DNA of 64,000 bases from Laetmonice hystrix (GCA_965235115.1 OZ249437.1:14198001-14262000); one strand, 5' to 3'. Shown: positions 12,188 through 54,500, numbered from the stretch's first letter. Translations and numbers: made by a program. Notes: generated by a model not told the origin, from the sequence alone.

Positions 12188-15100
12188 TCATGCGGCCTCC
12201 TCAATGTCTGAGATCAGTGGTTCCTTCTCAAGGCTTGTTTTACGAACCTCAAGCTGGAATTCTGTGGTAGCTTTGGGTGCTGTAGCGCGGCGGGTTGGAG
12301 ATTTGGACTCCCGGAACTGGCGAGATTCAGTGTCCGGGATGAAGATAGCTACCATGAGAGCTAAGATTACCAAAATGGCACCAAATGCAAATGGAGGACC
12401 CGGCACGATTCTCTGCAAACATAGAAATGTCATTTTTAAACTCAGAAAATATCCAAGAGCTTTATGGCTTTATATAATGACAGATTATTGTGTTTGACGT
12501 TCACCAGGTCTTGTGAAAGCTTAGTTTTAGTTTATATGTCATTTTAGTCTGAAAACATCCTTCCCCGCATAAATCTGCCATTTCGTACCATCAGAGTTTT
12601 CAGCCTAATATCAAGATAAATATTTCTCACCTCATTAGGCTCTCTGAGTAAACCCACTGGATGGCGAGTGACATTACTGACGGTGACTGGTTCACCATCG
12701 CTGGGTGGGTCCAGGTTAACGTGGAACAGGTAGAAGATGAAACCGAAGAGTGCGGGACCAAGGCCATTACACAACCCCCGGATACCTGTAATAACTCCCT
12801 GGGCCACACCTGGGGGGCAACACAAACGTAATACCATTATGCAACAACGTATCCATGTGATCAATAACAATGACTCTTGAGAAATTTACTCCTTCTGAAA
12901 ATTCCCCTTACCTGATGCCCTGATGGATGGTAGAAAAAAACACATGGTTTTGCTGTCACAACATTGACAATGAAGGTCTTGCTGAAGCTTTAATATATAC
13001 GTCCTACTCACCTTGTTGGTCGGGTTCTGCGTGTGTCGATGCGAACGAGCTAATGGCCGGGTAGGTGATGCTTCCCATGGCTGCCACTGACCCTGCCAGC
13101 CACATGATCCTACAACACAAACACCAACATCATCACAATGGACCGGGGAGGTGATGCTACCTGTGGCTGCCACTGACCCTGCCAGCCACATGATCCTACA
13201 ACACAAACACCAACATCATCACAGTGGTCCGGGTAGGTGATGCTTCCCATGGCTGCCACTGACCCTGCCAGCCACATGATCCTACAACACAAACACCAAC
13301 ATCATCACAGTGGACCGGGGAGGTGATGCTACCTGTGGCTGCCACTGACCCTGCCAGCCACATGATCCTACAACACAAACACCAACATCATCACAGTGGA
13401 CCGGGGAGGTGATGCTTCCCATGGCTACCACTGACCCTGCCAGCCACATGATCCTACAACACAAACACCAACATCATCACAGTGGACCAGGGAGGTGATG
13501 CTTCCCATGGCTACCACTGACCCTGCCAGCCACATGATCCTACAACACAAACACCAACATCATCACAGTGGACCGGGGAGGTGATGCTACCTGTGGCTGC
13601 CACTGACCCTGCCAGCCACATGATCCTACAACACAAACACCAACATCATCACAGTGGTCCGGGTAGGTGATGCTTCCCATGGCTGCCACTGACCCTGCCA
13701 GCCACATGATCCTACAACACAAACACAAACGTCATCACAGTGGTCTGGGGAGGTGATGCTTCCCATGGCTGCCACTGACCCTGCCAGCCACATGATCCTA
13801 CAACACAAACACCAACATCATCACAGTGGACCGGGGAGGTGATGCTACCTGTGTAGAGCCAGTCAATTTCCGCGATCACGGAATCGCGGAATTTACTATT
13901 TGAAACGGAATTTCCAAGGTAAAACGGAAAATAACGGAAAACGTCTTTTTTACTACTAATTCCCCAGCCGACCGTATATATACAGTGTAGCTGGGACCTG
14001 GGTTGGCCTGGCTGGACCCTCTAGAGGAGTGGGATGTAGACCCAGTCAAATTCCGTGATCCTTGCCAGGAAATTCCGTTTTGAATTTTTAAAATTCCGTT
14101 TTTTTTCCGTTTCAGTATTTTCCCAGTATACAGGGTGTCCCAAAAAATGCACAACCATATCTGCACACCTGTCACATTTGCGAGTCCAGTCTGTTTGCTC
14201 TAAGAAGAGCTCGAACATATTCATGACCCTCCCATCCCACTCCTCTAGAGGGTCCAGCCAGGCCAACCCAGGTCCCAGCTACACTGTATATATACGGTCG
14301 GCTGGGGAATTAGTAGTAAAAAAGACGTTTTCCGTTATTTTCCGTTTTACCTTGGAAATTCCGTTTCAAATAGTAAATTCCGCGATTCCTTCCGCGATTC
14401 CGTGATCGCGGAAATTGACTGGCTCTAGGGATGGGAGGGTCATGAATATGTTCGAGCTCTTCTTAGAGCAAACAGACTGGACTCGCAAATGTGACAGGTG
14501 TGCAGATATGGTTGTGCATTTTTTGGGACACCCTGTATACTGGGAAAATACTGAAACGGAAAAAAAACGGAATTTTAAAAATTCAAAACGGAATTTCCTG
14601 GCAAGGATCACGGAATTTGACTGGGTCTACCTGTGGCTGCCACTGACCCTGCCAGCCACATGATCCTACAACACAAACACCAACATCATCACAGTGGTCC
14701 GGGGAGGTGATGCTACCTGTGGCTGCCACTGACCCTGCCAGCCACATGATCCTACAACACAAACACCAACATCATCACAGTGGACCAGGGAGGTGATGCT
14801 TCCCATGGCTACCACTGACCCTGCCAGCCACATGATCCTACAACACAAACACCAACATCATCACAGTGGACCGGGGAGGTGATGCTACCTGTGGCTGCCA
14901 CTGACCCTGCCAGCCACATGATCCTACAACACAAACACCAACATCATCACAGTGGTCCGGGGAGGTGATGCTACCTGTGGCTGCCACTGACCCTGCCAGC
15001 CACATGATCCTACAACACAAACACCAACATCATCACAGTGGACCGGGGAGGTGATGCTACCTGTGGCTGCCACTGACCCTGCCAGCCACATGATCCTACA

Positions 15101-18100
15101 ACACAAACACCAACATCATCACAGTGGTCCGGGGAGGTGATGCTACCTGTGGCTGCCACTGACCCTGCCAGCCACATGATCCTACAACACAAATGTTCAC
15201 CAACATCATCACAGTGGTCCGCAGAGGTGATGCTTCCCATGGCTGCCATTTACCTATGATCATTTGGTTAAATGTTGACATTACAGCAAATATTAATAGT
15301 GCACTTGTCTTTATAAATGTTTGAATATTTATTCGATTCTTAATAATATCTTTATTTGATATCATAGGGAATGTACACAACCTAGAAAGTTCAACCTACT
15401 ACCACCATGTTATATAGGTTGTATGCCCGACCACCTTGGGGCAAAGATCTCGGAAGATAGCGGAATCGTTCTTGGTCTAATTCAGGCCGGATAAATAGTC
15501 ACAAACGAAGGGGGGGGGGGCAGCAATTGAAGGATTTATTTATTACATCCCTTCAAAGTAAAACAAACAAATTCGAACTGAGCCACTCACCATGCTTGGG
15601 AGCCAAAGCCATACAGAGCGAGTTGTAACATCTCAAAGGCCAAGCCAACCATGATTGTATGTTTATTTCCCAGGTACTTCATTAATAAGGCTAAAATGGC
15701 AGTCTGCAAGAAAAAACGCAACATCCAAAACTTTATACTTTCTGTAACTGTTGTATAGTAAGATATGATACTACAGGTCGTAGTTACTACTTTTAAGATG
15801 ACAGTGAAATATTGTATGCAGTGTCTTAATAAATCAATGGAAGAAATTTGTTCCAATATTTAGGACCCATTCTGCTGGCTTAGGACCAGTAACTAAGATA
15901 CTCAATAATTCCACACACCTGGGCTAAAACTGACAAGACTCCTACAACAGCTATGAAGGATGCCACCTGCTCCCGTGAGAAGTGCATGACCTGAGAAGAG
16001 AATGGATCATTAGTTCACAGTCAAATGATGTTGTATGCACAATGTTATCTTTATACATCTATATGTCACCTTCAGCCGTATCTAAAATAGTGTAAGATCT
16101 GGTTTTGTGACTAAAGATGATTTCTTTTAATTGCAAAAACAGTGCTTAACAATTTTTGTAAAAGAAGATGTGTTAGAATAGATATTTTCTAAGACAGACA
16201 AACATACAGACAGACAGCTAGACAGACAGAGACAGATGCGAGGCAATGACGTATCACATACCAAAAAGTTGGGGTTTCACATAAACTTCTTAGCAGATTT
16301 TTGAAAGAAACACACTGTTATATTTTCTTTCTTTTTGCTGGCAATTGGACATCTGGACAACATTTACCAATGAGAGTGAACTTACTAGTCGGAGATAGAC
16401 GAAGAAGCAGGAGTACTCGCCAGCCTCCGGGAGGTAGGACAGAAACACGGAGACACACAGCATTAGGATCAACTGGTCTTGACCAATCTTCTTCAGGGCC
16501 TGTAAAGTCAAAGGTCAAGCAATCCTCACAATATAAGAAAAGTGAAATATTATACTTTACAAATCCTGTAATAGCACAGAAAAAACTCTTAGGGTTCACA
16601 CAACTCTTTAACCTAATGAGCAAGATTTCTTTAGATAATTATGATACGAAATTATTGTGTTGCCTGCCTCATCTGTGCTGATAAAAGTCTGCGCTGATCA
16701 CGACACAATCTAAAGACCAATGATCAGAAACCTGATTAGTGCCTGGTAGCTAGGCTTGCAATTTGTTGATACTTCGTGTATGTTTTTAACAGGCCTAGAC
16801 AGACTTTAAGAGCTATAGACAAGGCCTATACATGGCACCACCCTTGTGAAAAGACTTGCCCACTAGACGAAGCTGTACTCACCCCAAATGGATCTGCTTT
16901 CTCCCATGAGATCTGTGACCCCCAGGATGCAGGGCGAACCTTCTCAGGCAGAGACTCGGGCACAGCCACAAGAATAAATAGGATGTCAAGAAGTGCTACT
17001 GCCGCGGCCAGCGCAATCACCAAGTTCTCGCTGTACGTGTGCTCAAGGTATGCACCAATGGCAGGGCTTGTTACAAGACTGGCAGCAAACGTGGCAGACA
17101 CCTGGTAAAGGACCAGCAAACAACTCGGTTACAAAAGTAAACAATCACATCCACAAGAGTAGGAAATCTCAGAATTTCCAACGCCACTTATATTTGCAGG
17201 GCTACAGATATCAACGAGGTTCTGACTCAAGACAACCAAACTATGACCCCCTTTTGCTTTTCCTGGTAACATTCATTCAGGTATGAGGTGGGCCTCATTT
17301 AGTTCACTCACCAGTCCATAGGCGGCGCTGCGGTCTTCAGTGTTTGTGATATCTGCCACATATGCAAACACCACGCTGAACGTCACAGCAAAAATGCCAG
17401 AGATCGACAAAATTGTGAAGTACCACCTGAAAATAGAACAAATTTAGTCTTTTTCCTGAAATCCTAAATCTTACTTTTATTTTATCAGAGGTCAAGAATC
17501 TTAAAAATAAAGATGAATCTTGCACACTACTTTTATCCATGTCAAATGTAACAACTTGAGACCCATACCCTTTATGGCATAATCTATCTGGTATCATCAT
17601 ATCTATTCAAATTTATCACTGCTTGATCTGCAACTCACCATGGGCTAAACTTCATGAGAGGTATTGGGGCGCAGGTGAAGGTGACGGTAAGCAACATGAA
17701 TGGCTTGCGTCCCCACACATCTGACAGCGCCCCAATGAGGGGGGCGGCCATGAATGAAAGTAAACCCTGCAGAAAACAAATAACTCGGCATCCTTACCAG
17801 GAAACATCTGAGACAACTAAATAAATACCCCGGTACACTGTACGCTGTTCTCAAACAATTGCTCCCATTAAATATTACATAATGACACAGAATACAATCA
17901 CATTTGTGCTTCATTTATTATCAGGTGCACCCATTTTAAAATGATTTTATATCACATACACTGCAACAATGCTACATATAACCCCAGACCAAAGAAGGAC
18001 TATTATTAAATCAACAACTCTTGACTACCCACCTTGACTCCTTGAATGAGGCCATTCATAAGAAAGGTGTGGTCCGGGAAAGTCTCATTCAACACCTGCA

Positions 18101-29820: not shown

Positions 29821-30536
29821 GTGGTCGCCTGTGGCGTTACTGTTGCTGCATGGTTTCAGAGTTTGGCGTCCTCTTATTCTTGGAGTAATAAAAGTTGAAT
29901 TTGAGACAAGTGTTTAACTTCTATGACCTTTCGAAGTTAAGTGGCCCATCCTGCCCCTAGTTCGCTATAGGGAGTTATTCACCTTCTGGAACGATATAGG
30001 CCTAAAGAATGTTAAACCCACTAATCAGGAACAGATTCAAACAATAATGTAGGCTATTTGGAATAACAATTCATGTGCTTATTGGGGGTCTGTGGTACAA
30101 ATTTCAGATAAATAGATCAAAACATCTACAAATAGGCCTAGGGCCATTTCTAAAAATTTGTGTAAAAAAAAATGCAATGCAGGACCAGGGGTGCGTTCCT
30201 CATCTGTCGTTATCTTGTCGTGCGTTAAAATCCCCATTGAAAATACATTGGAGTTAACGATACGACAAGCTAACGACATAATGAGGAACACCCCCCCCCC
30301 CCCCCCCGGGGTCATTAGCGTGAAGCCGTGTGCAGGTCTTAACTGGCAACTGGTTTAAACTGACCACAGTTGTCAGTTTAGATCCAGGTATAAACTGACA
30401 AATAGTGATTACTAGCCGCTGAAATGGTAATCACTAATTTGAACTGATTCAGATGATGACAGCACTAAACTCTGTGAAGGGCACTGTAAAAATAAAGGTT
30501 CAACTTATGATTTTCTCTAATAATGCTCGACAAAAA

Positions 30537-32607
30537 GGCCAGTCAATACATGTAGGGAGCCCTCACTCTCGTATTTGCTCAAGTATAAAGCCAGTCAGTC
30601 CATGTGGGCAGCCCTCACTTTAGTGTTAGCTCCAGTCTAAGGCGGGTCAATACATCTAGAGAGCCCTCACTGTAGTGTTTGCTCGAGTATAAGGCCAGAC
30701 AGTACCTGCTGGGAGCCATCACTGTAGTGTTTGCTCGAGAATAAGGCCGGTCAATACATCTAGAGAGCCCTCACTGTAGTGTTTGCTCAAGTATAAGGCC
30801 AGTCAGCCCTCACTGTAGTGTTTGCTCCAGCCCAAGGCCAGTCATTACATGGAGGGAGCTCTCACTCTAGGGTTTGCTCGACAAAAAGGCCATACATGTA
30901 GGGAGCCCTTACTGTAGTATTTGCTCGAGTATAAGGCCAGTCAGTCCATGTGGGCAGTCCTCACTGTAGTGTTAGCTCCAGTCGGAAGCCGCTTTCACAT
31001 GCATACGGTGTGCGGCGTGCGGCATGCGGCGTGCGTTTTTGTTAATAATGTAGCCAATGTAAATCGCCGCACACCGCAAACCGGGGGCATGTGAACGGTT
31101 ATATCTATTTTCAGTTGTTCCATTTCTGCAAAAACGCAGACCGCACGCCGCACGCCGCACGCCGCAAACCGTGTGCATGTGAAAGCGGCTTAAGGCCGGT
31201 CAATACATCTAGACAACGCCCACTGTAGTGTTTGCTCGACAATAAGGCCAGTCAATACATGTAGGGAACGCTCACTGTAGTATTTGCTCGAGTATAAGGC
31301 CAGTCAGTCCATGTTGGCAGCCCTCACTGTAGTGTTTGCTCCAGGCAGAGGCCAGTCAATACATGTAGAGTGCCCTCACTCTAGTATTTGCTCGAGTATG
31401 CCGCCACGCAATACATGTAGGGAGTCCTCACTGTAGCGTTTTCTCAAGTATAAGGCCAGTGAATACTTGTATGTAGCCCTCACTGTAGTGGTTGCTTCAG
31501 TCTAAGCTCAGTCAATACATGTTGAAAGCCCTCACTGTAGTGGTTGCTTCAGTCTAAGCTCAGTCAATACATGTTGAAAGCCCTCACTGTAGTGTTTGCT
31601 CGACAATAAGGTCAGTCAATACATGTAGGGAGCCCTCACTGTAGCGTCTGCTTCAGTCTAAATTTAGTCAATACATGTAGAGCCCTCACTGTAGTGTTTC
31701 CTCGAGTATGACGCCAGTCAATAATGTAGAGAGCCCTCACTGTAGTGTTTGCTCCAGTCTGAGTCCGGTCAGAACATCTAGAGAGCCCTCACTATAGTGT
31801 TTGCTCGAGTTTGACGCCAGGGAATACATGTAGAGAGCCCTTACTGTACTGTTTGCTCCAGCCCAAGGCCAGTCAATACATGTAGCCAGCCCTCACTGTA
31901 GTGTTTGCTCGAGTATAAGGCCAGTCAATACATGTAGGGAGCCCTCACTGTGGTGTTTGCTCCAGGCAGTTGCCAGTCAATACATGTAAAGTGCCCTCGC
32001 TGTAGTTTTTGCTCGAGTATAAGGCCAGTCAGTACATGTAGGGAGCCCTCACTGTAGGGTTTGCTCCAGCCCACGGCCAGTTATTCCATGAAGGGAGCCC
32101 TCAATTTAGTGTTTGTTCGATAATGAGGCCAGTCAATACATGTAGGCAGCCCTCACTGTAGTGTTTGCTCGAGTATAAGGCCAGTCAGATCATGTGGGCA
32201 GCCCTCACTGTAGTCTTTGCTCCAGGCTGAGGCCGGTCAATACATCTAGAGAGCCCTCACTAGTGTTTGCTCAAGTATGACGCCACTCAAAACATATAGG
32301 GAACCCTCACTGTACCCTCTGCTCCAGCCCAAGGTCAGTCATTACATGAAGGGAGCCCTAACTGTAATGTTTCCTCGACAATAAGGCCAGTCAATACATG
32401 TAGAGTGCCCTCACTGTAGTGTTTGCTCGAGTATAAGGCCAAACAATACTTGTAGAGAACCCCCACTGTAGTGTTTGCTCGACAATAAGGCCAGTCAATA
32501 CATGTAGGGATCCCTCACTCTAGTGTTTGCTCCAGTTTGGGGCAAGTCAATATGTGTAGAGAGCCATCACTGTAGTGTTTGCTTGAGGATAACGCCAGAC
32601 AGTACAT
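30537..32607. repeat. Degenerate ~52-bp satellite (ccctcactgtagtgtttgctcgagtataaggccagtcaatacatgtagggag), ~35 units
   Basis: ctcactgtag recurs at ~52-bp intervals; interrupted by the MITE at 30986. Confidence 0.95.
30986..31191. mobile_element. Harbinger/Tourist-like MITE inserted in the satellite
   Basis: 24-bp TIR aagccgctttcacatgca(t/c)acggt. Right flank TAA matches the empty site (cagtctaagg); left flank reads GGA (degenerate). Confidence 0.8.
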
Positions 32608-51590: not shown

Positions 51591-54500
51591 TTAATAGACA
51601 CGGTCGTCAAACTTCTTCGCCTTGGAGTACATGTCACTGTAGACTTTGCCCAGGTTGTTATTGAAGAGTTCTCGGTGTGACTGCCCCTTGTACTCACTCG
51701 CTCTCTGAGTCCAATACTCGCCGTCGTTCACATGGACGAGACTGTGACAAAAACAAAACTTTACTCATCATTCTAGTCAGGATTTCTAAGCTGCCATTAA
51801 TACAATAAAAGTTATCAGATGATCTATCAGATGATTTATAAACTAAAGAGTTTGGGAAAAAGCAGCATGTGGTTTTAGATAACATCAAGCTCAGAATTTT
51901 TCAAGCGTCAAGCAATAAAGTAGTGTGAGTTAAAAAAGATGTTAATATTATACATTTAAGAAATGACATTGAGTAGAAGCGATCTGTTCCACTTGAGAAA
52001 ATGAGTTTCATCACACTCAAGGTAAATCATTGTGACTGAAAATAATGGAGCAAACTGACCATGGATGCAGATCTCGGGTCAACAACAATCTTTTTGACAA
52101 CTCCACTTCCTCCTCAGCAATACTACTCTATTCAAAGTTCGACTTTTGTCTGATGTAACTTTCCAGATTCAGACTACCAAACATCAAGTCTAATGGCCGT
52201 CTAAAAATGATATCTACCAGAAAGGGCAAACACACACCCAATGTCTCAAAGCTATTGGGAAGGGGCAAAACTTTTCATACTAAAGTCTGTTGGTCAGCCG
52301 GGAGCCCTGCATGAGGTCAGGTCAGGGGGTCAGGTAGATGGTGTTAGGAAAAACCAAAGTCAACAACCTGAGAGACCTCAAAGGTAGTAGTACCTCCTGT
52401 TTCTGGCAATCTCCAAGTCACGTTCCAGGTCACGGATCTTGTCAAAGTCTTCGTCATAGTAGTTGATGGCCTGAAACATGCATACATACTCATTCAGTAA
52501 CAAGATGAAAGCCCCTGAAACAGTTTCTAATGTTATTGTTGTAACAGGGTTCCCACAGGTTGGCTATATTGAAATTTCATGACTTCTCCATGACTTTTCC
52601 AGACCAAAATTCCCAAATTTCATGACCAATTCTGGATGAAATTATGGACTAAAATCCTACAATTGTCCCCGAAAAAATAAGTCGTGAAACTTTACAATTT
52701 AGACCCAACGTGCAGAAACTGAAATGTGGTTCAAAAGAAATCTCAAATTCCATGACACTCCCTTGTTTTTCTATTTTCCATGACTGGAAAACCAAATTCC
52801 ATTTTCCATGACTCTTCATGACCATGGGAACCCTGTGTAAGTCAAAGTGGTTTTCTGTATCATACATAAGTAAAATCTAAGGTTAACAGCAGCAAAATTA
52901 ATATTCACAGACCTGCCAGCATTTCACAATTTTTGTGAGTAGCAACATTCAGCCCCATGCTCCAAAGTGGCACAGCCAGGGCATGTGCCGCGTGCCAGGA
53001 CGCATGGTTAGGTACGGGAGGGGGATATCCCCCTTCTTCTGGGGGATATGGGGAGCCACCCCCCAAAATGAACTAAGGGTTCTTTCAGATGCATTCTGTG
53101 CACAATTTGAGCAGAAAGTGATGCCTAACATAGGCCCTTCTTTTTCAATCGGCAGTGAAAAGGTGATTTTTACGGTAAATAGCCATTTCTAGAGGTTTTT
53201 GATTAAGATATGAAGGACTGAGCATAGCAGCATAGTTGGAGTGTCAAATAATCTTCAGTCCCATATCACTGGTGACATATGGTCTGAATTCAAGGAGGAT
53301 TTTTGTTTCTAGTATTTCTGTATTGGTTTCTCCTGAAGACTTCACCTGGCCTCTGAAAAGACAAAGCCATGCTTGTCGACCTCATGTCACTTTTTAATTC
53401 AGAAAATCCTCTACATACCCCTCGTGAGGACGACCGGCGTCGCTGCTGCTCTCTTGAACGTCTTTCTCTTGACCTGTTCCGCTGCAGAGCTTCGTCAACG
53501 CGGCTTGCGATCGATCTGCTGAGATTGTCATCCTCAAAACGTTCCCGCAGAGACTGTCTGAGCGTGACAGGACTGGGTGAACGTTGGCGCTGGTACGAGT
53601 ATGCTGAGATTGGACGCGATGTGGAGCGGTAAATCACAGGTCCCGGATCGCTGACGTCAGACAGCACTGTGTGGCAAGAAGAATGGTGTACATACCATTC
53701 AGGGAATTACAGAGGGAATGAATAAATATCACATTCAGGTCTTGTGTGCCAAACTTCCAATTACAGAGGGAATGAAGAAATATCACATTCAGGTCTTGTG
53801 TGCCAAACTTCCAATTACAGAGGGAATGAAGAAATATCACATTCAGGTCTTGTGTGCCAAACTTCCCATTAATGGCTTATTCTCTTACCAATCCAAATGA
53901 ATTCAACTTACCATCTGACGAGTCATCCATTTCTGAGAGCGAGTAGCTAGAGTAATAAGAGTCTCTCAGTGGCTGTAGATAGAAGGAGAATATGAATGAA
54001 ATGGGCGATCATTAAATGTTTGGCGACAATATTCCATGTTCTCACAGCGAAATCAAGCAAGGCTCAACATATCAAAATATCTTAATATCTGACTGTGTCT
54101 TGGTAAAGTAATATTGATGAATAATACTTCTTAAAATACTTAATTCTTAATTTATTTAATTCTCAAACTAGTCTCTTGTGAATCTTTTGTAAAGCTTGTG
54201 GTCATAGATGATTTTTACATCTTGTTATTGACGGCCAACTTCAAGATTACTACACATCTTAACCCAAGTGTGGATTGGTACTTCTAATAATATGTGTAGT
54301 TGTGAAAAAAGTTACGGCGGGTGCTCGCCATACCTTGTGTGAGTAACTGTACCATGGTCTAGAACCAACCAAGCGATAGTCCTCATCAAGATAGGAATCA
54401 ACGCCACCTACTGGTGAAAAGAACATTCAACTGTGGTAACGCAGTGCGGCTAGTATGCAAGCCTTGAATTTAGTTTCTCTTATCATCAAACAGCTGGAAC

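What the first reader, a model, noticed from the sequence alone, without database searches (positions are those of the whole stretch)
13854..14629. A MITE inserted into a near-identical copy of itself in reverse orientation
Seen: arrangement A-B-A'-B'. The outer 379-bp copy has a 6-bp TSD CCTGTG, with the empty site visible in flanking repeat units. The inner 391-bp copy has a 6-bp TSD GGGATG, with its empty site visible in the inner copy itself. The copies differ by eye only by a 12-bp duplication. Two clean TSDs argue for two real transposition events rather than misassembly. Inference: very recent activity with local hopping or self-targeting. The element also carries a TACAGGGTGTCCCAAAA segment resembling a Tc1/mariner terminus.
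Basis: partly seen in the sequence, partly recalled or inferred. Interest (0 to 1): 0.7.

Follow-up and report, generated by a model that had tools for sequence, protein, structure and literature searches.

The report
Small transposon nested inside its twin
A 391-base non-coding mobile element sits, reversed, in the middle of a practically identical 379-base copy of itself inside a gene's intron; this is a rare but already known kind of event (the maize 'double Ds' arrangement) and shows that the family moved very recently.

Summary
An outer 379-bp MITE (13854-14036 + 14434-14629, TSD CCTGTG) interrupts one unit of an 86-bp minisatellite. An inner 391-bp copy (14037-14427, opposite orientation, TSD GGGATG) interrupts the outer one. 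The copies have no substitutions between them. One correction: the 12-bp difference is a private deletion in the outer copy, not a duplication in the inner, because 27 of 29 other aligned copies carry both 12-bp units.

The family has about 390 recognisable ends in this 627-Mb genome, and 35 of 39 copies examined have exact 6-bp TSDs. Only four copies form the youngest subfamily, and two of those four are this pair. That makes a local or sister-chromatid hop far likelier than a random hit.

The ends (TAGAG...), the weak CATATG target preference, eight subterminal ACGGAA repeats and a resident hAT element with a 6-bp TSD point to the known hAT6 group. No coding partner with these ends was found, so that assignment is inferred.

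The arrangement has the same topology as maize double Ds. The structure lies in a spliced intron. Reads could not test the junctions.

Verdict: a real, well-documented new member of a known kind. The scan had noted only this same stretch before, not other DNA.

The parts
13057..13846 (.). Left part of the host 86-bp minisatellite (9.2 units)
   Evidence: Tandem Repeats Finder; repeat family D1
13848..13853 (+). Left copy of the outer target-site duplication CCTGTG
   Evidence: Sequence; uninterrupted site in neighbouring units
13854..14036 (+). Outer MITE, 5' half (starts TAGAGCCAGTCAATTTCCGCGATC; a single ACGGAATCGCGG unit at 13878-13889, i.e. a 12-bp deletion relative to the family)
14031..14036 (+). 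Left copy of the inner target-site duplication GGGATG (part of the outer MITE)
   Evidence: the intact site is present once in the inner copy
14037..14427 (-). Inner MITE, 391 bp, complete, reverse orientation. Its 3' end lies at 14037 and its 5' end at 14427. Both 12-bp units are at 14378-14401.
14428..14433 (+). Right copy of the inner target-site duplication GGGATG
14434..14629 (+). Outer MITE, 3' half (ends ...GATCACGGAATTTGACTGGGTCTA)
14630..14635 (+). Right copy of the outer target-site duplication CCTGTG
14627..15248 (.). Right part of the host 86-bp minisatellite (7.2 units)
14129..14145 (+). TACAGGGTGTCCCAAAA inside the inner copy (its mirror is at 14521-14537 on the minus strand in the outer copy). 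It is one end of a separate TA-CAGGG... repeat family that this MITE carries internally.
   Evidence: 148 exact genome hits, many away from this MITE's listed ends, and inverted pairs at C2:19369661/19369725 and C4:29499325/29499709
13110..15590 (-). Intron of the minus-strand host gene. It contains the whole minisatellite and both MITEs (GT at 15590-15589, AG at 13111-13110 on the minus strand).
   Evidence: a contig of run X4 joins 13108 to 15590 with ends CT..AC. Sequence. The downstream exon reads open as IMWLAGSVAAMGSITYPAISSFASTHAEPDQQ.

Best explanation
This is a self-nested pair of one non-autonomous cut-and-paste transposon (MITE) family.

Step 1 (shown by sequence): a copy integrated into one unit of an intronic 86-bp minisatellite and duplicated CCTGTG.

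Step 2 (shown by sequence): a second copy of the same youngest subfamily integrated in reverse orientation at position 183 of the first and duplicated GGGATG.

Step 3 (shown by comparison with the family): the outer copy lost one of two tandem 12-bp units.

Inferred: the second copy came from the same locus. The most likely route is excision from the sister chromatid or homologue and reinsertion into the resident copy, which is the local-hopping behaviour typical of hAT elements.

Inferred: the family belongs to the hAT group that makes 6-bp duplications (hAT6, in the Buster/Blackjack lineage). It would be moved in trans by a transposase whose own element does not share these ends in this assembly.

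The result has the topology of maize double Ds. Reading along the + strand, the four ends are 5'>, 3'>, <5', <3'.
For: Structure and both TSDs.

Family: at least 512 first-look candidates, and all 30 fetched copies carry the same ends. There are 393 ends matching a 19-nt pattern, against 1 control hit. 35 of 39 copies have exact 6-bp TSDs and three more differ at one base.

Youth: outer and inner differ only by the 12-bp indel. C19:1665795 differs from the inner copy by 1 base and C1:41134289 differs from the outer copy by 5 further changes. The subfamily marker 24-mer occurs only 3 times in 627 Mb. Many other copies lie only 0.5-1% from the sampled consensus.

Local hop: three other young copies offer about 1.2 kb of target in 627 Mb, which is roughly 2e-6 per insertion. 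No other place in the listed ends (C1 to C5, C1 to C18) has four ends within 1 kb.

hAT6-like features:
- The 5' end TAGAG fits the hAT end motif YARNG.
- The TIR is about 24 nt with 3 mismatches.
- Eight ACGGAA and five AAACGG subterminal repeats all point the same way, so the two ends are unlike.
- The target consensus is a weak palindrome C-A-T-A-T-G with a central TA in 19 of 35 copies.
- A resident 3598-bp element (L079, C8:26874977-26878574) has a 651-aa ORF that matches Dimer_Tnp_hAT and, below threshold, DUF4371. It has 15-nt TIRs and a 6-bp TSD.
- Its nearest protein-atlas clusters are ZMYM1/FAM200/ZBED5-like.
- Other elements with hAT-like ends in the held loci have 5- or 6-bp TSDs and none has 8 bp.

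Literature: hAT5 and hAT6 are defined by 5- and 6-bp TSDs (PMC12730594). The Buster family target is nnnTAnnn (PMC3517528). Ac transposase binds subterminal AAACGG repeats, and nested Ds elements are rare because they break chromosomes (PMC3260210).
Against: No sequencing read or contig was shown to span either inner junction. Only short Logan contigs of one sample, probably the assembly's own, were available.

No autonomous element with these ends was found:
- Pairing the listed 5' and 3' ends gave only MITEs, or MITEs with foreign inserts.
- The 13-nt end followed by a different base at position 15 occurs at chance level, 34 hits against 41 control hits.
- Only 3 mutated MITEs carry the 5' 24-mer and diverge after it.
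- None of the 30 best hAT loci holds the end or the subterminal motif.

The 3' end is TAGAC, which is not a perfect YARNG.

The inner copy carries both 12-bp units and the outer copy one. A source at the same locus therefore requires the deletion to be later than the hop, or part of it.

Another agent's note (s1-344650) reports a P-like family with 5-bp TSDs in this genome. TSD length alone is therefore a weak guide to superfamily here.
Confidence: 0.8

Rival explanations
1. The nested pair is real, but the inner copy came from an unlinked donor, such as the C19 or C1 copy, and landed in the outer copy by chance or through a general preference for such DNA. No local or sister-chromatid hop was involved.
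For: The inner copy has both 12-bp units, like C19:1665795, which differs from it by one base. The outer copy lacks one unit. Rice MITE families with frequent self-insertion are on record (Jiang and Wessler 2001, cited in PMC5172404).
Against: The target offered by the three other young copies is about 2e-6 of the genome. Even a hit on any family member is expected only about 0.01-0.08 times over the family's whole history (200-500 copies of 390 bp in 627 Mb). No second nested pair appears among the listed ends. The hit site is a poor match to the family's target preference.
Confidence: 0.15
2. The element is not a hAT relative. It belongs to another superfamily that makes 6-bp duplications (IS3EU, Dada, a Polinton derivative) or to an undescribed one.
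For: No coding partner was found. IS3EU also makes 6-bp TSDs (PMC12730594). This genome holds families with unusual TSD lengths (notes s1-344650 and s1-306570).
Against: The ends are TAGAG/TAGAC, not the TAYGG..CCRTA with TIRs over 30 bp reported for fungal IS3EU (PMC12730594). Targets are varied, not RNA genes as for Dada (my own knowledge of that family). The TIRs are short, unlike Polinton TIRs of hundreds of bases. A true hAT with a 6-bp TSD lives in this genome.
Confidence: 0.3
3. The structure is an assembly artefact: a false inverted duplication created around a single MITE inside a repetitive array.
For: The region is a minisatellite with perfect inverted repeats, which is hard for assemblers. 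No spanning read was obtained.
Against: An artefact would not create a second exact 6-bp duplication, of the family's own length, at an internal site. It would not give two full-length copies with complete ends, nor a 12-bp indel between them. The 776-bp insert keeps the 86-bp register of the array exactly.
Confidence: 0.04

Closest known systems
Maize double Ds (Doring, Tillmann and Starlinger 1984, reference 5 in PMC3260210; aberrant transposition reviewed in PMC3239180)
   Same: One non-autonomous hAT-type element is inserted in reverse orientation into a copy of itself, with its own target duplication. This leaves 5' and 3' ends in direct orientation close together.
   Different: This case is in an animal. 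The copies are 0.4 kb rather than about 2 kb, and the TSDs are 6 bp rather than 8 bp. Chromosome breakage has not been tested here and the transposase has not been identified.
Self-insertions of rice MITEs (Castaway, Gaijin; Jiang and Wessler 2001, summarised in PMC5172404) and of P{lacW} in Drosophila (PMC4744444)
   Same: A DNA transposon is found inside another copy of its own family, through independent insertion events.
   Different: Those rice families show self-insertion as a frequent habit. Here only one such pair is seen among the listed ends, and it involves two of only four youngest copies.
hAT6 group of hAT transposons (Kapitonov and Jurka 2007, cited in PMC12730594)
   Same: 6-bp target duplications, short TIRs that start like YARNG, and an animal host. 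A resident hAT with a 6-bp TSD is present (L079).
   Different: Membership is inferred from the DNA features only, because no transposase gene carries these ends in the assembly.
Maize Ds1 (PMC3260210)
   Same: An element of about 400 bp that shares little with any autonomous partner beyond its ends and a few subterminal repeats. It can sit in an intron and be spliced out.
   Different: The partner of Ds1 is known (Ac). No partner is known here. The subterminal repeats are dense here (8 ACGGAA), whereas most Ds1 copies have few AAACGG repeats.

Membership tests
MITE (short non-autonomous TIR transposon) | Terminal inverted repeats | tested here: met
   TAGAGCCAGTCAATTTCCGCGATC against TAGACCCAGTCAAATTCCGTGATC, 21 of 24 bases
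MITE (short non-autonomous TIR transposon) | Target-site duplications of fixed length with varied sequence | tested here: met
   35 of 39 copies have exact 6-bp TSDs, all at different sites
MITE (short non-autonomous TIR transposon) | Small, many copies, no transposase gene | tested here: met
   Copies are 377-413 bp. There are 393 matching ends. Only short overlapping ORFs of 116 aa or less, on both strands, lie across the nested pair.
hAT superfamily, hAT6 group | 6-bp target-site duplication | tested here: met
   definition in PMC12730594
hAT superfamily, hAT6 group | Short TIRs beginning YARNG | tested here: inconclusive
   The 5' end TAGAG fits. The 3' end TAGAC differs at the fifth base. 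The motif itself is taken from my own knowledge of hAT elements.
hAT superfamily, hAT6 group | An autonomous relative with the same ends that encodes a hAT transposase | tested here: inconclusive
   None was found.
hAT superfamily, hAT6 group | hAT transposases in this genome make 6-bp TSDs | tested here: met
   L079: a 651-aa ORF matching Dimer_Tnp_hAT, 15-nt TIRs and TSD AACACA. This is a single example in an ACA-rich context.
IS3EU | 6-bp TSD together with TIRs over 30 bp that end TAYGG..CCRTA (reported for fungal families, PMC12730594) | tested here: not met
   The TSD length fits, but the ends are TAGAG/TAGAC and the TIR is about 24 nt
Tc1/mariner | TA target duplication at the element's ends | tested here: not met
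   The MITE has 6-bp TSDs of varied sequence. Only an internal 17-mer looks like a TA-CAGGG end, and that belongs to another family.
Double-Ds-type self-nested composite | A complete copy inside a copy of the same family, in reverse orientation, with its own TSD | tested here: met
Double-Ds-type self-nested composite | Causes chromosome breakage through aberrant transposition | not testable with these tools
   Needs genetics or cytology with an active transposase

The most novel reading that the evidence does not exclude
The pair may be a working animal counterpart of maize double Ds. Its directly oriented 5' and 3' ends would let the transposase join ends from sister chromatids, which would break or rearrange the chromosome at this intron. 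Separately, its transcription within the host pre-mRNA yields a perfect 203-bp RNA duplex that could seed small-RNA silencing of the whole family. I know of such a silencing role for the maize Mu killer locus from my own knowledge; I did not check it here.
Probability: 0.12. Interest if true: 0.6.

Novelty: new member of a known kind. Interest (0 to 1): 0.36.

Why it matters
The pair marks a DNA-transposon family that has moved very recently in this animal genome. It gives a clean natural example of local reinsertion into a resident copy.

It also flags a locus in an expressed gene's intron that could be unstable if the transposase is still active, and that must form long double-stranded RNA when transcribed.

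For annotation, it shows that hAT-like families with 6-bp duplications are common here. Repeat-finding tools that expect 8 bp for hAT would misfile or miss them.

Tried and rejected
1. Read support. Only Logan contigs of one sample exist. They are short and come mostly from other copies, so no junction test was possible.

2. Search for a coding partner:
- Pairing the listed 5' and 3' ends found only MITEs. Some carry foreign inserts: a 1241-bp copy on C13 and 672- and 728-bp copies on C7. One pair 11.5 kb apart on C11 proved to include only a truncated MITE at its 3' end.
- There are 53 hAT dimerisation-domain hits. The 30 best loci hold neither the end nor the ACGGAA motif.
- The negative-selection patterns gave chance-level hits or mutated MITEs.
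- One pattern was mis-designed and uninformative.
- A search with the L079 protein listed further hAT copies, none near a solo end.

I did not try to read those letters by any other route.

4. A PDB sequence search with the L079 transposase found nothing.

5. TAAGGCCAGTCAA matches at 31243-32498 in the window belong to an unrelated satellite of about 55 bp.

6. Two old papers on double Ds (PMC160289, PMC160947) are not held.

Full report
OBSERVATION. An 86-bp minisatellite (13057-13846 and 14627-15248) is interrupted once. The start-to-start spacing across the interruption is 868 = 86 + 776 + 6, so the insert keeps the register of the array. The interrupted unit reads ...gctaCCTGTG[776 bp]CCTGTGgctgcc..., and neighbouring units read gctaCCTGTGgctgcc.

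The 776 bp consist of an outer element and an inner element. The outer element is 13854-14036 plus 14434-14629 (379 bp). The inner element is 14037-14427 (391 bp) in the opposite orientation. The inner element is flanked by GGGATG on both sides, and that hexamer occurs once at the matching place within the inner element itself. The inverted arms of 203, 157 and 38 nt are all 100% complementary.

THE 12-BP DIFFERENCE. In an alignment with 29 other genomic copies, 27 carry two tandem 12-bp units (ACGGAATCGCGG twice) after the TIR, as the inner copy does. The outer copy carries one unit. The difference is therefore a deletion private to the outer copy within its subfamily, not a duplication in the inner copy. 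Five older copies also have a single unit, but they are only 92.5-95.6% identical to the outer copy.

THE FAMILY. The window lies at C2:14198001-14262000 of a 627-Mb assembly in 35 contigs. A search with the inner copy gave at least 512 first-look candidates. All 30 loci fetched carry TAGAGCCAGTCA...TGACTGGGTCTA. The 24-nt ends occur 158 times (5') and 167 times (3') with at most one mismatch, against 0 for the reversed controls. A 19-nt pattern covering both ends occurs 393 times.

Of 39 different copies, 35 have exact 6-bp duplications, three differ at one base and one does not match. The target shows a weak palindromic preference, C-A-T-A-T-G, with the central T and A each in 19 of 35 copies. 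The two sites here, CCTGTG and CATCCC, fit it poorly.

AGE. Outer and inner copies have no substitution over 379 aligned bases. C19:1665795 differs from the inner copy by one base. C1:41134289 differs from the outer copy by five further changes. A 24-mer diagnostic for this subfamily occurs only three times in the genome. With the outer copy, which lost that stretch, the subfamily therefore has four members.

All four members have different TSDs, so they arose by transposition and not by segmental duplication. Many other copies are only 0.5-1% from the sampled consensus, and the young subfamily lies about 2.1-3.1% from it.

WHY A LOCAL HOP. The three other young copies offer about 1.2 kb of target in 627 Mb, roughly 2e-6 per insertion. 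Even a hit on any family member is expected only about 0.01-0.08 times over the family's history (200-500 copies of 390 bp). Among the listed ends this is the only place with four ends within 1 kb.

The simplest account is that a copy at this locus was excised from the sister chromatid or the homologue and reinserted into the resident copy. The 12-bp loss in the outer copy would then be later, or part of the same event. This step is inference. The alternative, an unlinked donor such as the C19 copy, cannot be excluded without population data.

SUPERFAMILY. The arguments for the hAT group with 6-bp duplications (hAT6; defined in PMC12730594, citing Kapitonov and Jurka 2007) are these:
- The TSD is 6 bp.
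- The 5' end TAGAG fits the hAT end motif YARNG, and the TIRs are short and imperfect.
- Eight ACGGAA repeats, five of them AAACGG, lie in the subterminal 90 bases of each side. All point the same way, so the two ends are unlike. AAACGG repeats are the sites that Ac transposase binds (PMC3260210). The identity of the hexamer may be coincidence.
- The central TA of the target recalls the Buster-family target nnnTAnnn (PMC3517528).
- A resident 3598-bp element (L079, C8:26874977-26878574) has 15-nt TIRs (CAAGGCTCGAAATAA), a 6-bp TSD (AACACA) and a 651-aa ORF. The ORF matches Dimer_Tnp_hAT and, below threshold, DUF4371. Its nearest atlas clusters are ZMYM1/FAM200/ZBED5-like (a lead only).
- Other elements with hAT-like ends in the held loci have 5- or 6-bp TSDs and none has 8 bp. 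This agrees with the earlier unchecked note s1-306570.

Against this assignment, no coding element with these ends was found. I put the hAT6 assignment at about 0.55-0.6. IS3EU, the other known 6-bp family with TA-starting ends, has TAYGG..CCRTA ends and longer TIRs in the families described (PMC12730594), which does not fit.

THE INTERNAL TA-CAGGG SEGMENT. TACAGGGTGTCCCAAAA occurs 148 times exactly. More than half of the listed places are not near listed ends of this MITE. Two places are inverted pairs, at C2:19369661/19369725 and C4:29499325/29499709. The MITE therefore seems to carry one end of a separate family. The TA-CAGGG start is Tc1/mariner-like, but I could not fetch those loci to check for TA duplications.

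CONTEXT. A contig of run X4 joins 13108 to 15590 with ends CT..AC, which is a GT-AG intron on the minus strand (sequence). The exon downstream of it reads open. The whole array and both MITEs are therefore intronic and are spliced out in that sample. The minus-strand RNA of the 776 bases folds into a perfect duplex of about 203 bp (-499 kcal/mol, z = -36). The two possible long duplexes cross each other (A with A', B with B'), so only one can form at a time.

COMPARISON WITH WHAT IS KNOWN. The arrangement matches maize double Ds, in which one Ds is inserted in reverse orientation into its own copy. Reading rightwards, the four ends here are 5'> (13854), 3'> (14037), <5' (14427) and <3' (14629). 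A 5' and a 3' end therefore lie in direct orientation 183 bp apart on the left, and again 202 bp apart on the right.

Such directly oriented ends are the substrate of sister-chromatid transposition and chromosome breakage in the Ac/Ds system (PMC3239180). Nested Ds elements are rare in maize, presumably for that reason, and none was found in the B73 genome (PMC3260210). MITE self-insertions are also known in rice (PMC5172404), and P-element self-insertions in flies (PMC4744444). The finding is therefore a new member of a known kind. It is unusually clean, it is in an animal, and it probably involves a hAT6-type family.

LIMITS. No read spans the junctions, so the structure rests on the assembly and on the internal logic of the two TSDs. 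There is no population data. No transposase was identified. The organism is not known to me.

VERDICT. Interest is modest, about 0.36.

Noticed in passing
L079:2978-6575 (G000 C8:26874977-26878574): An apparently intact 3.6-kb hAT element. It has a 651-aa ORF (Dimer_Tnp_hAT, weak DUF4371), 15-nt TIRs CAAGGCTCGAAATAA and a 6-bp TSD AACACA. A 95-97% identical but broken copy lies at C8:31083657-31085587.
   Followed up: partly
L061:781-1600 (G000 C13:7063353-7064172): An 820-bp element with perfect 17-nt TIRs (CAGTGTTCGTCCTTAAC) and a 6-bp TSD TGACAG, nested inside an older copy of this MITE. It is a second family with hAT-like ends and 6-bp duplications.
   Followed up: partly
L064:756-1009, L065:1594-2813, L042:1974-2310, window 52545-52835: Four more small TIR elements with CAGGG... 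or TAAAG... ends and 6-, 6-, 5- and 5-bp TSDs. None of the TIR elements found in the held loci has an 8-bp TSD.
   Followed up: no
G000 C2:19369661-19369741 and C4:29499325-29499725: Inverted pairs of TACAGGGTGTCCCAAAA, 81 and 401 bp across, away from any listed end of this MITE. They are probably a separate TA-flanked (Tc1/mariner-like) MITE family, one end of which is carried inside the present MITE.
   Followed up: no
G000, e.g. C1:32376255, C1:40583854, C2:24839052, C3:17763883, C4:35615850, C4:37707150: Solo ends TAGAGCCAGTCAAATTCCG, a hybrid of the 5'- and 3'-type ends, with no listed partner end nearby. They may belong to a sister family or to longer relatives. I could not fetch them.
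   Followed up: no
window 30983-31193: An insert of about 210 bp with long inverted ends (GCCGCTTTCACATGCA...TGCATGTGAAAGCGGC) interrupts a satellite of about 55 bp that spans roughly 30500-32600.
   Followed up: no
window 13012-13109 (minus strand) and 13057-15248: The first minisatellite unit overlaps the 3' splice site and the start of an exon (IMWLAGSVAAMGSITYPAISSFASTHAEPDQQ). Each repeat unit therefore repeats the acceptor sequence tgttgtag|gatcatgtgg. A spliced contig uses the last one. Compare note s1-351856.
   Followed up: partly
G000 C4:18379816/18386399, C12:17935881/18003570, C7:9.12-9.69 Mb: MITE copies with identical flanks at two places reveal segmental duplications. These are a direct one of 6.6 kb spacing on C4, an inverted one 68 kb apart on C12, and a large inverted one on C7 that also duplicates hAT ORFs.
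   Followed up: no
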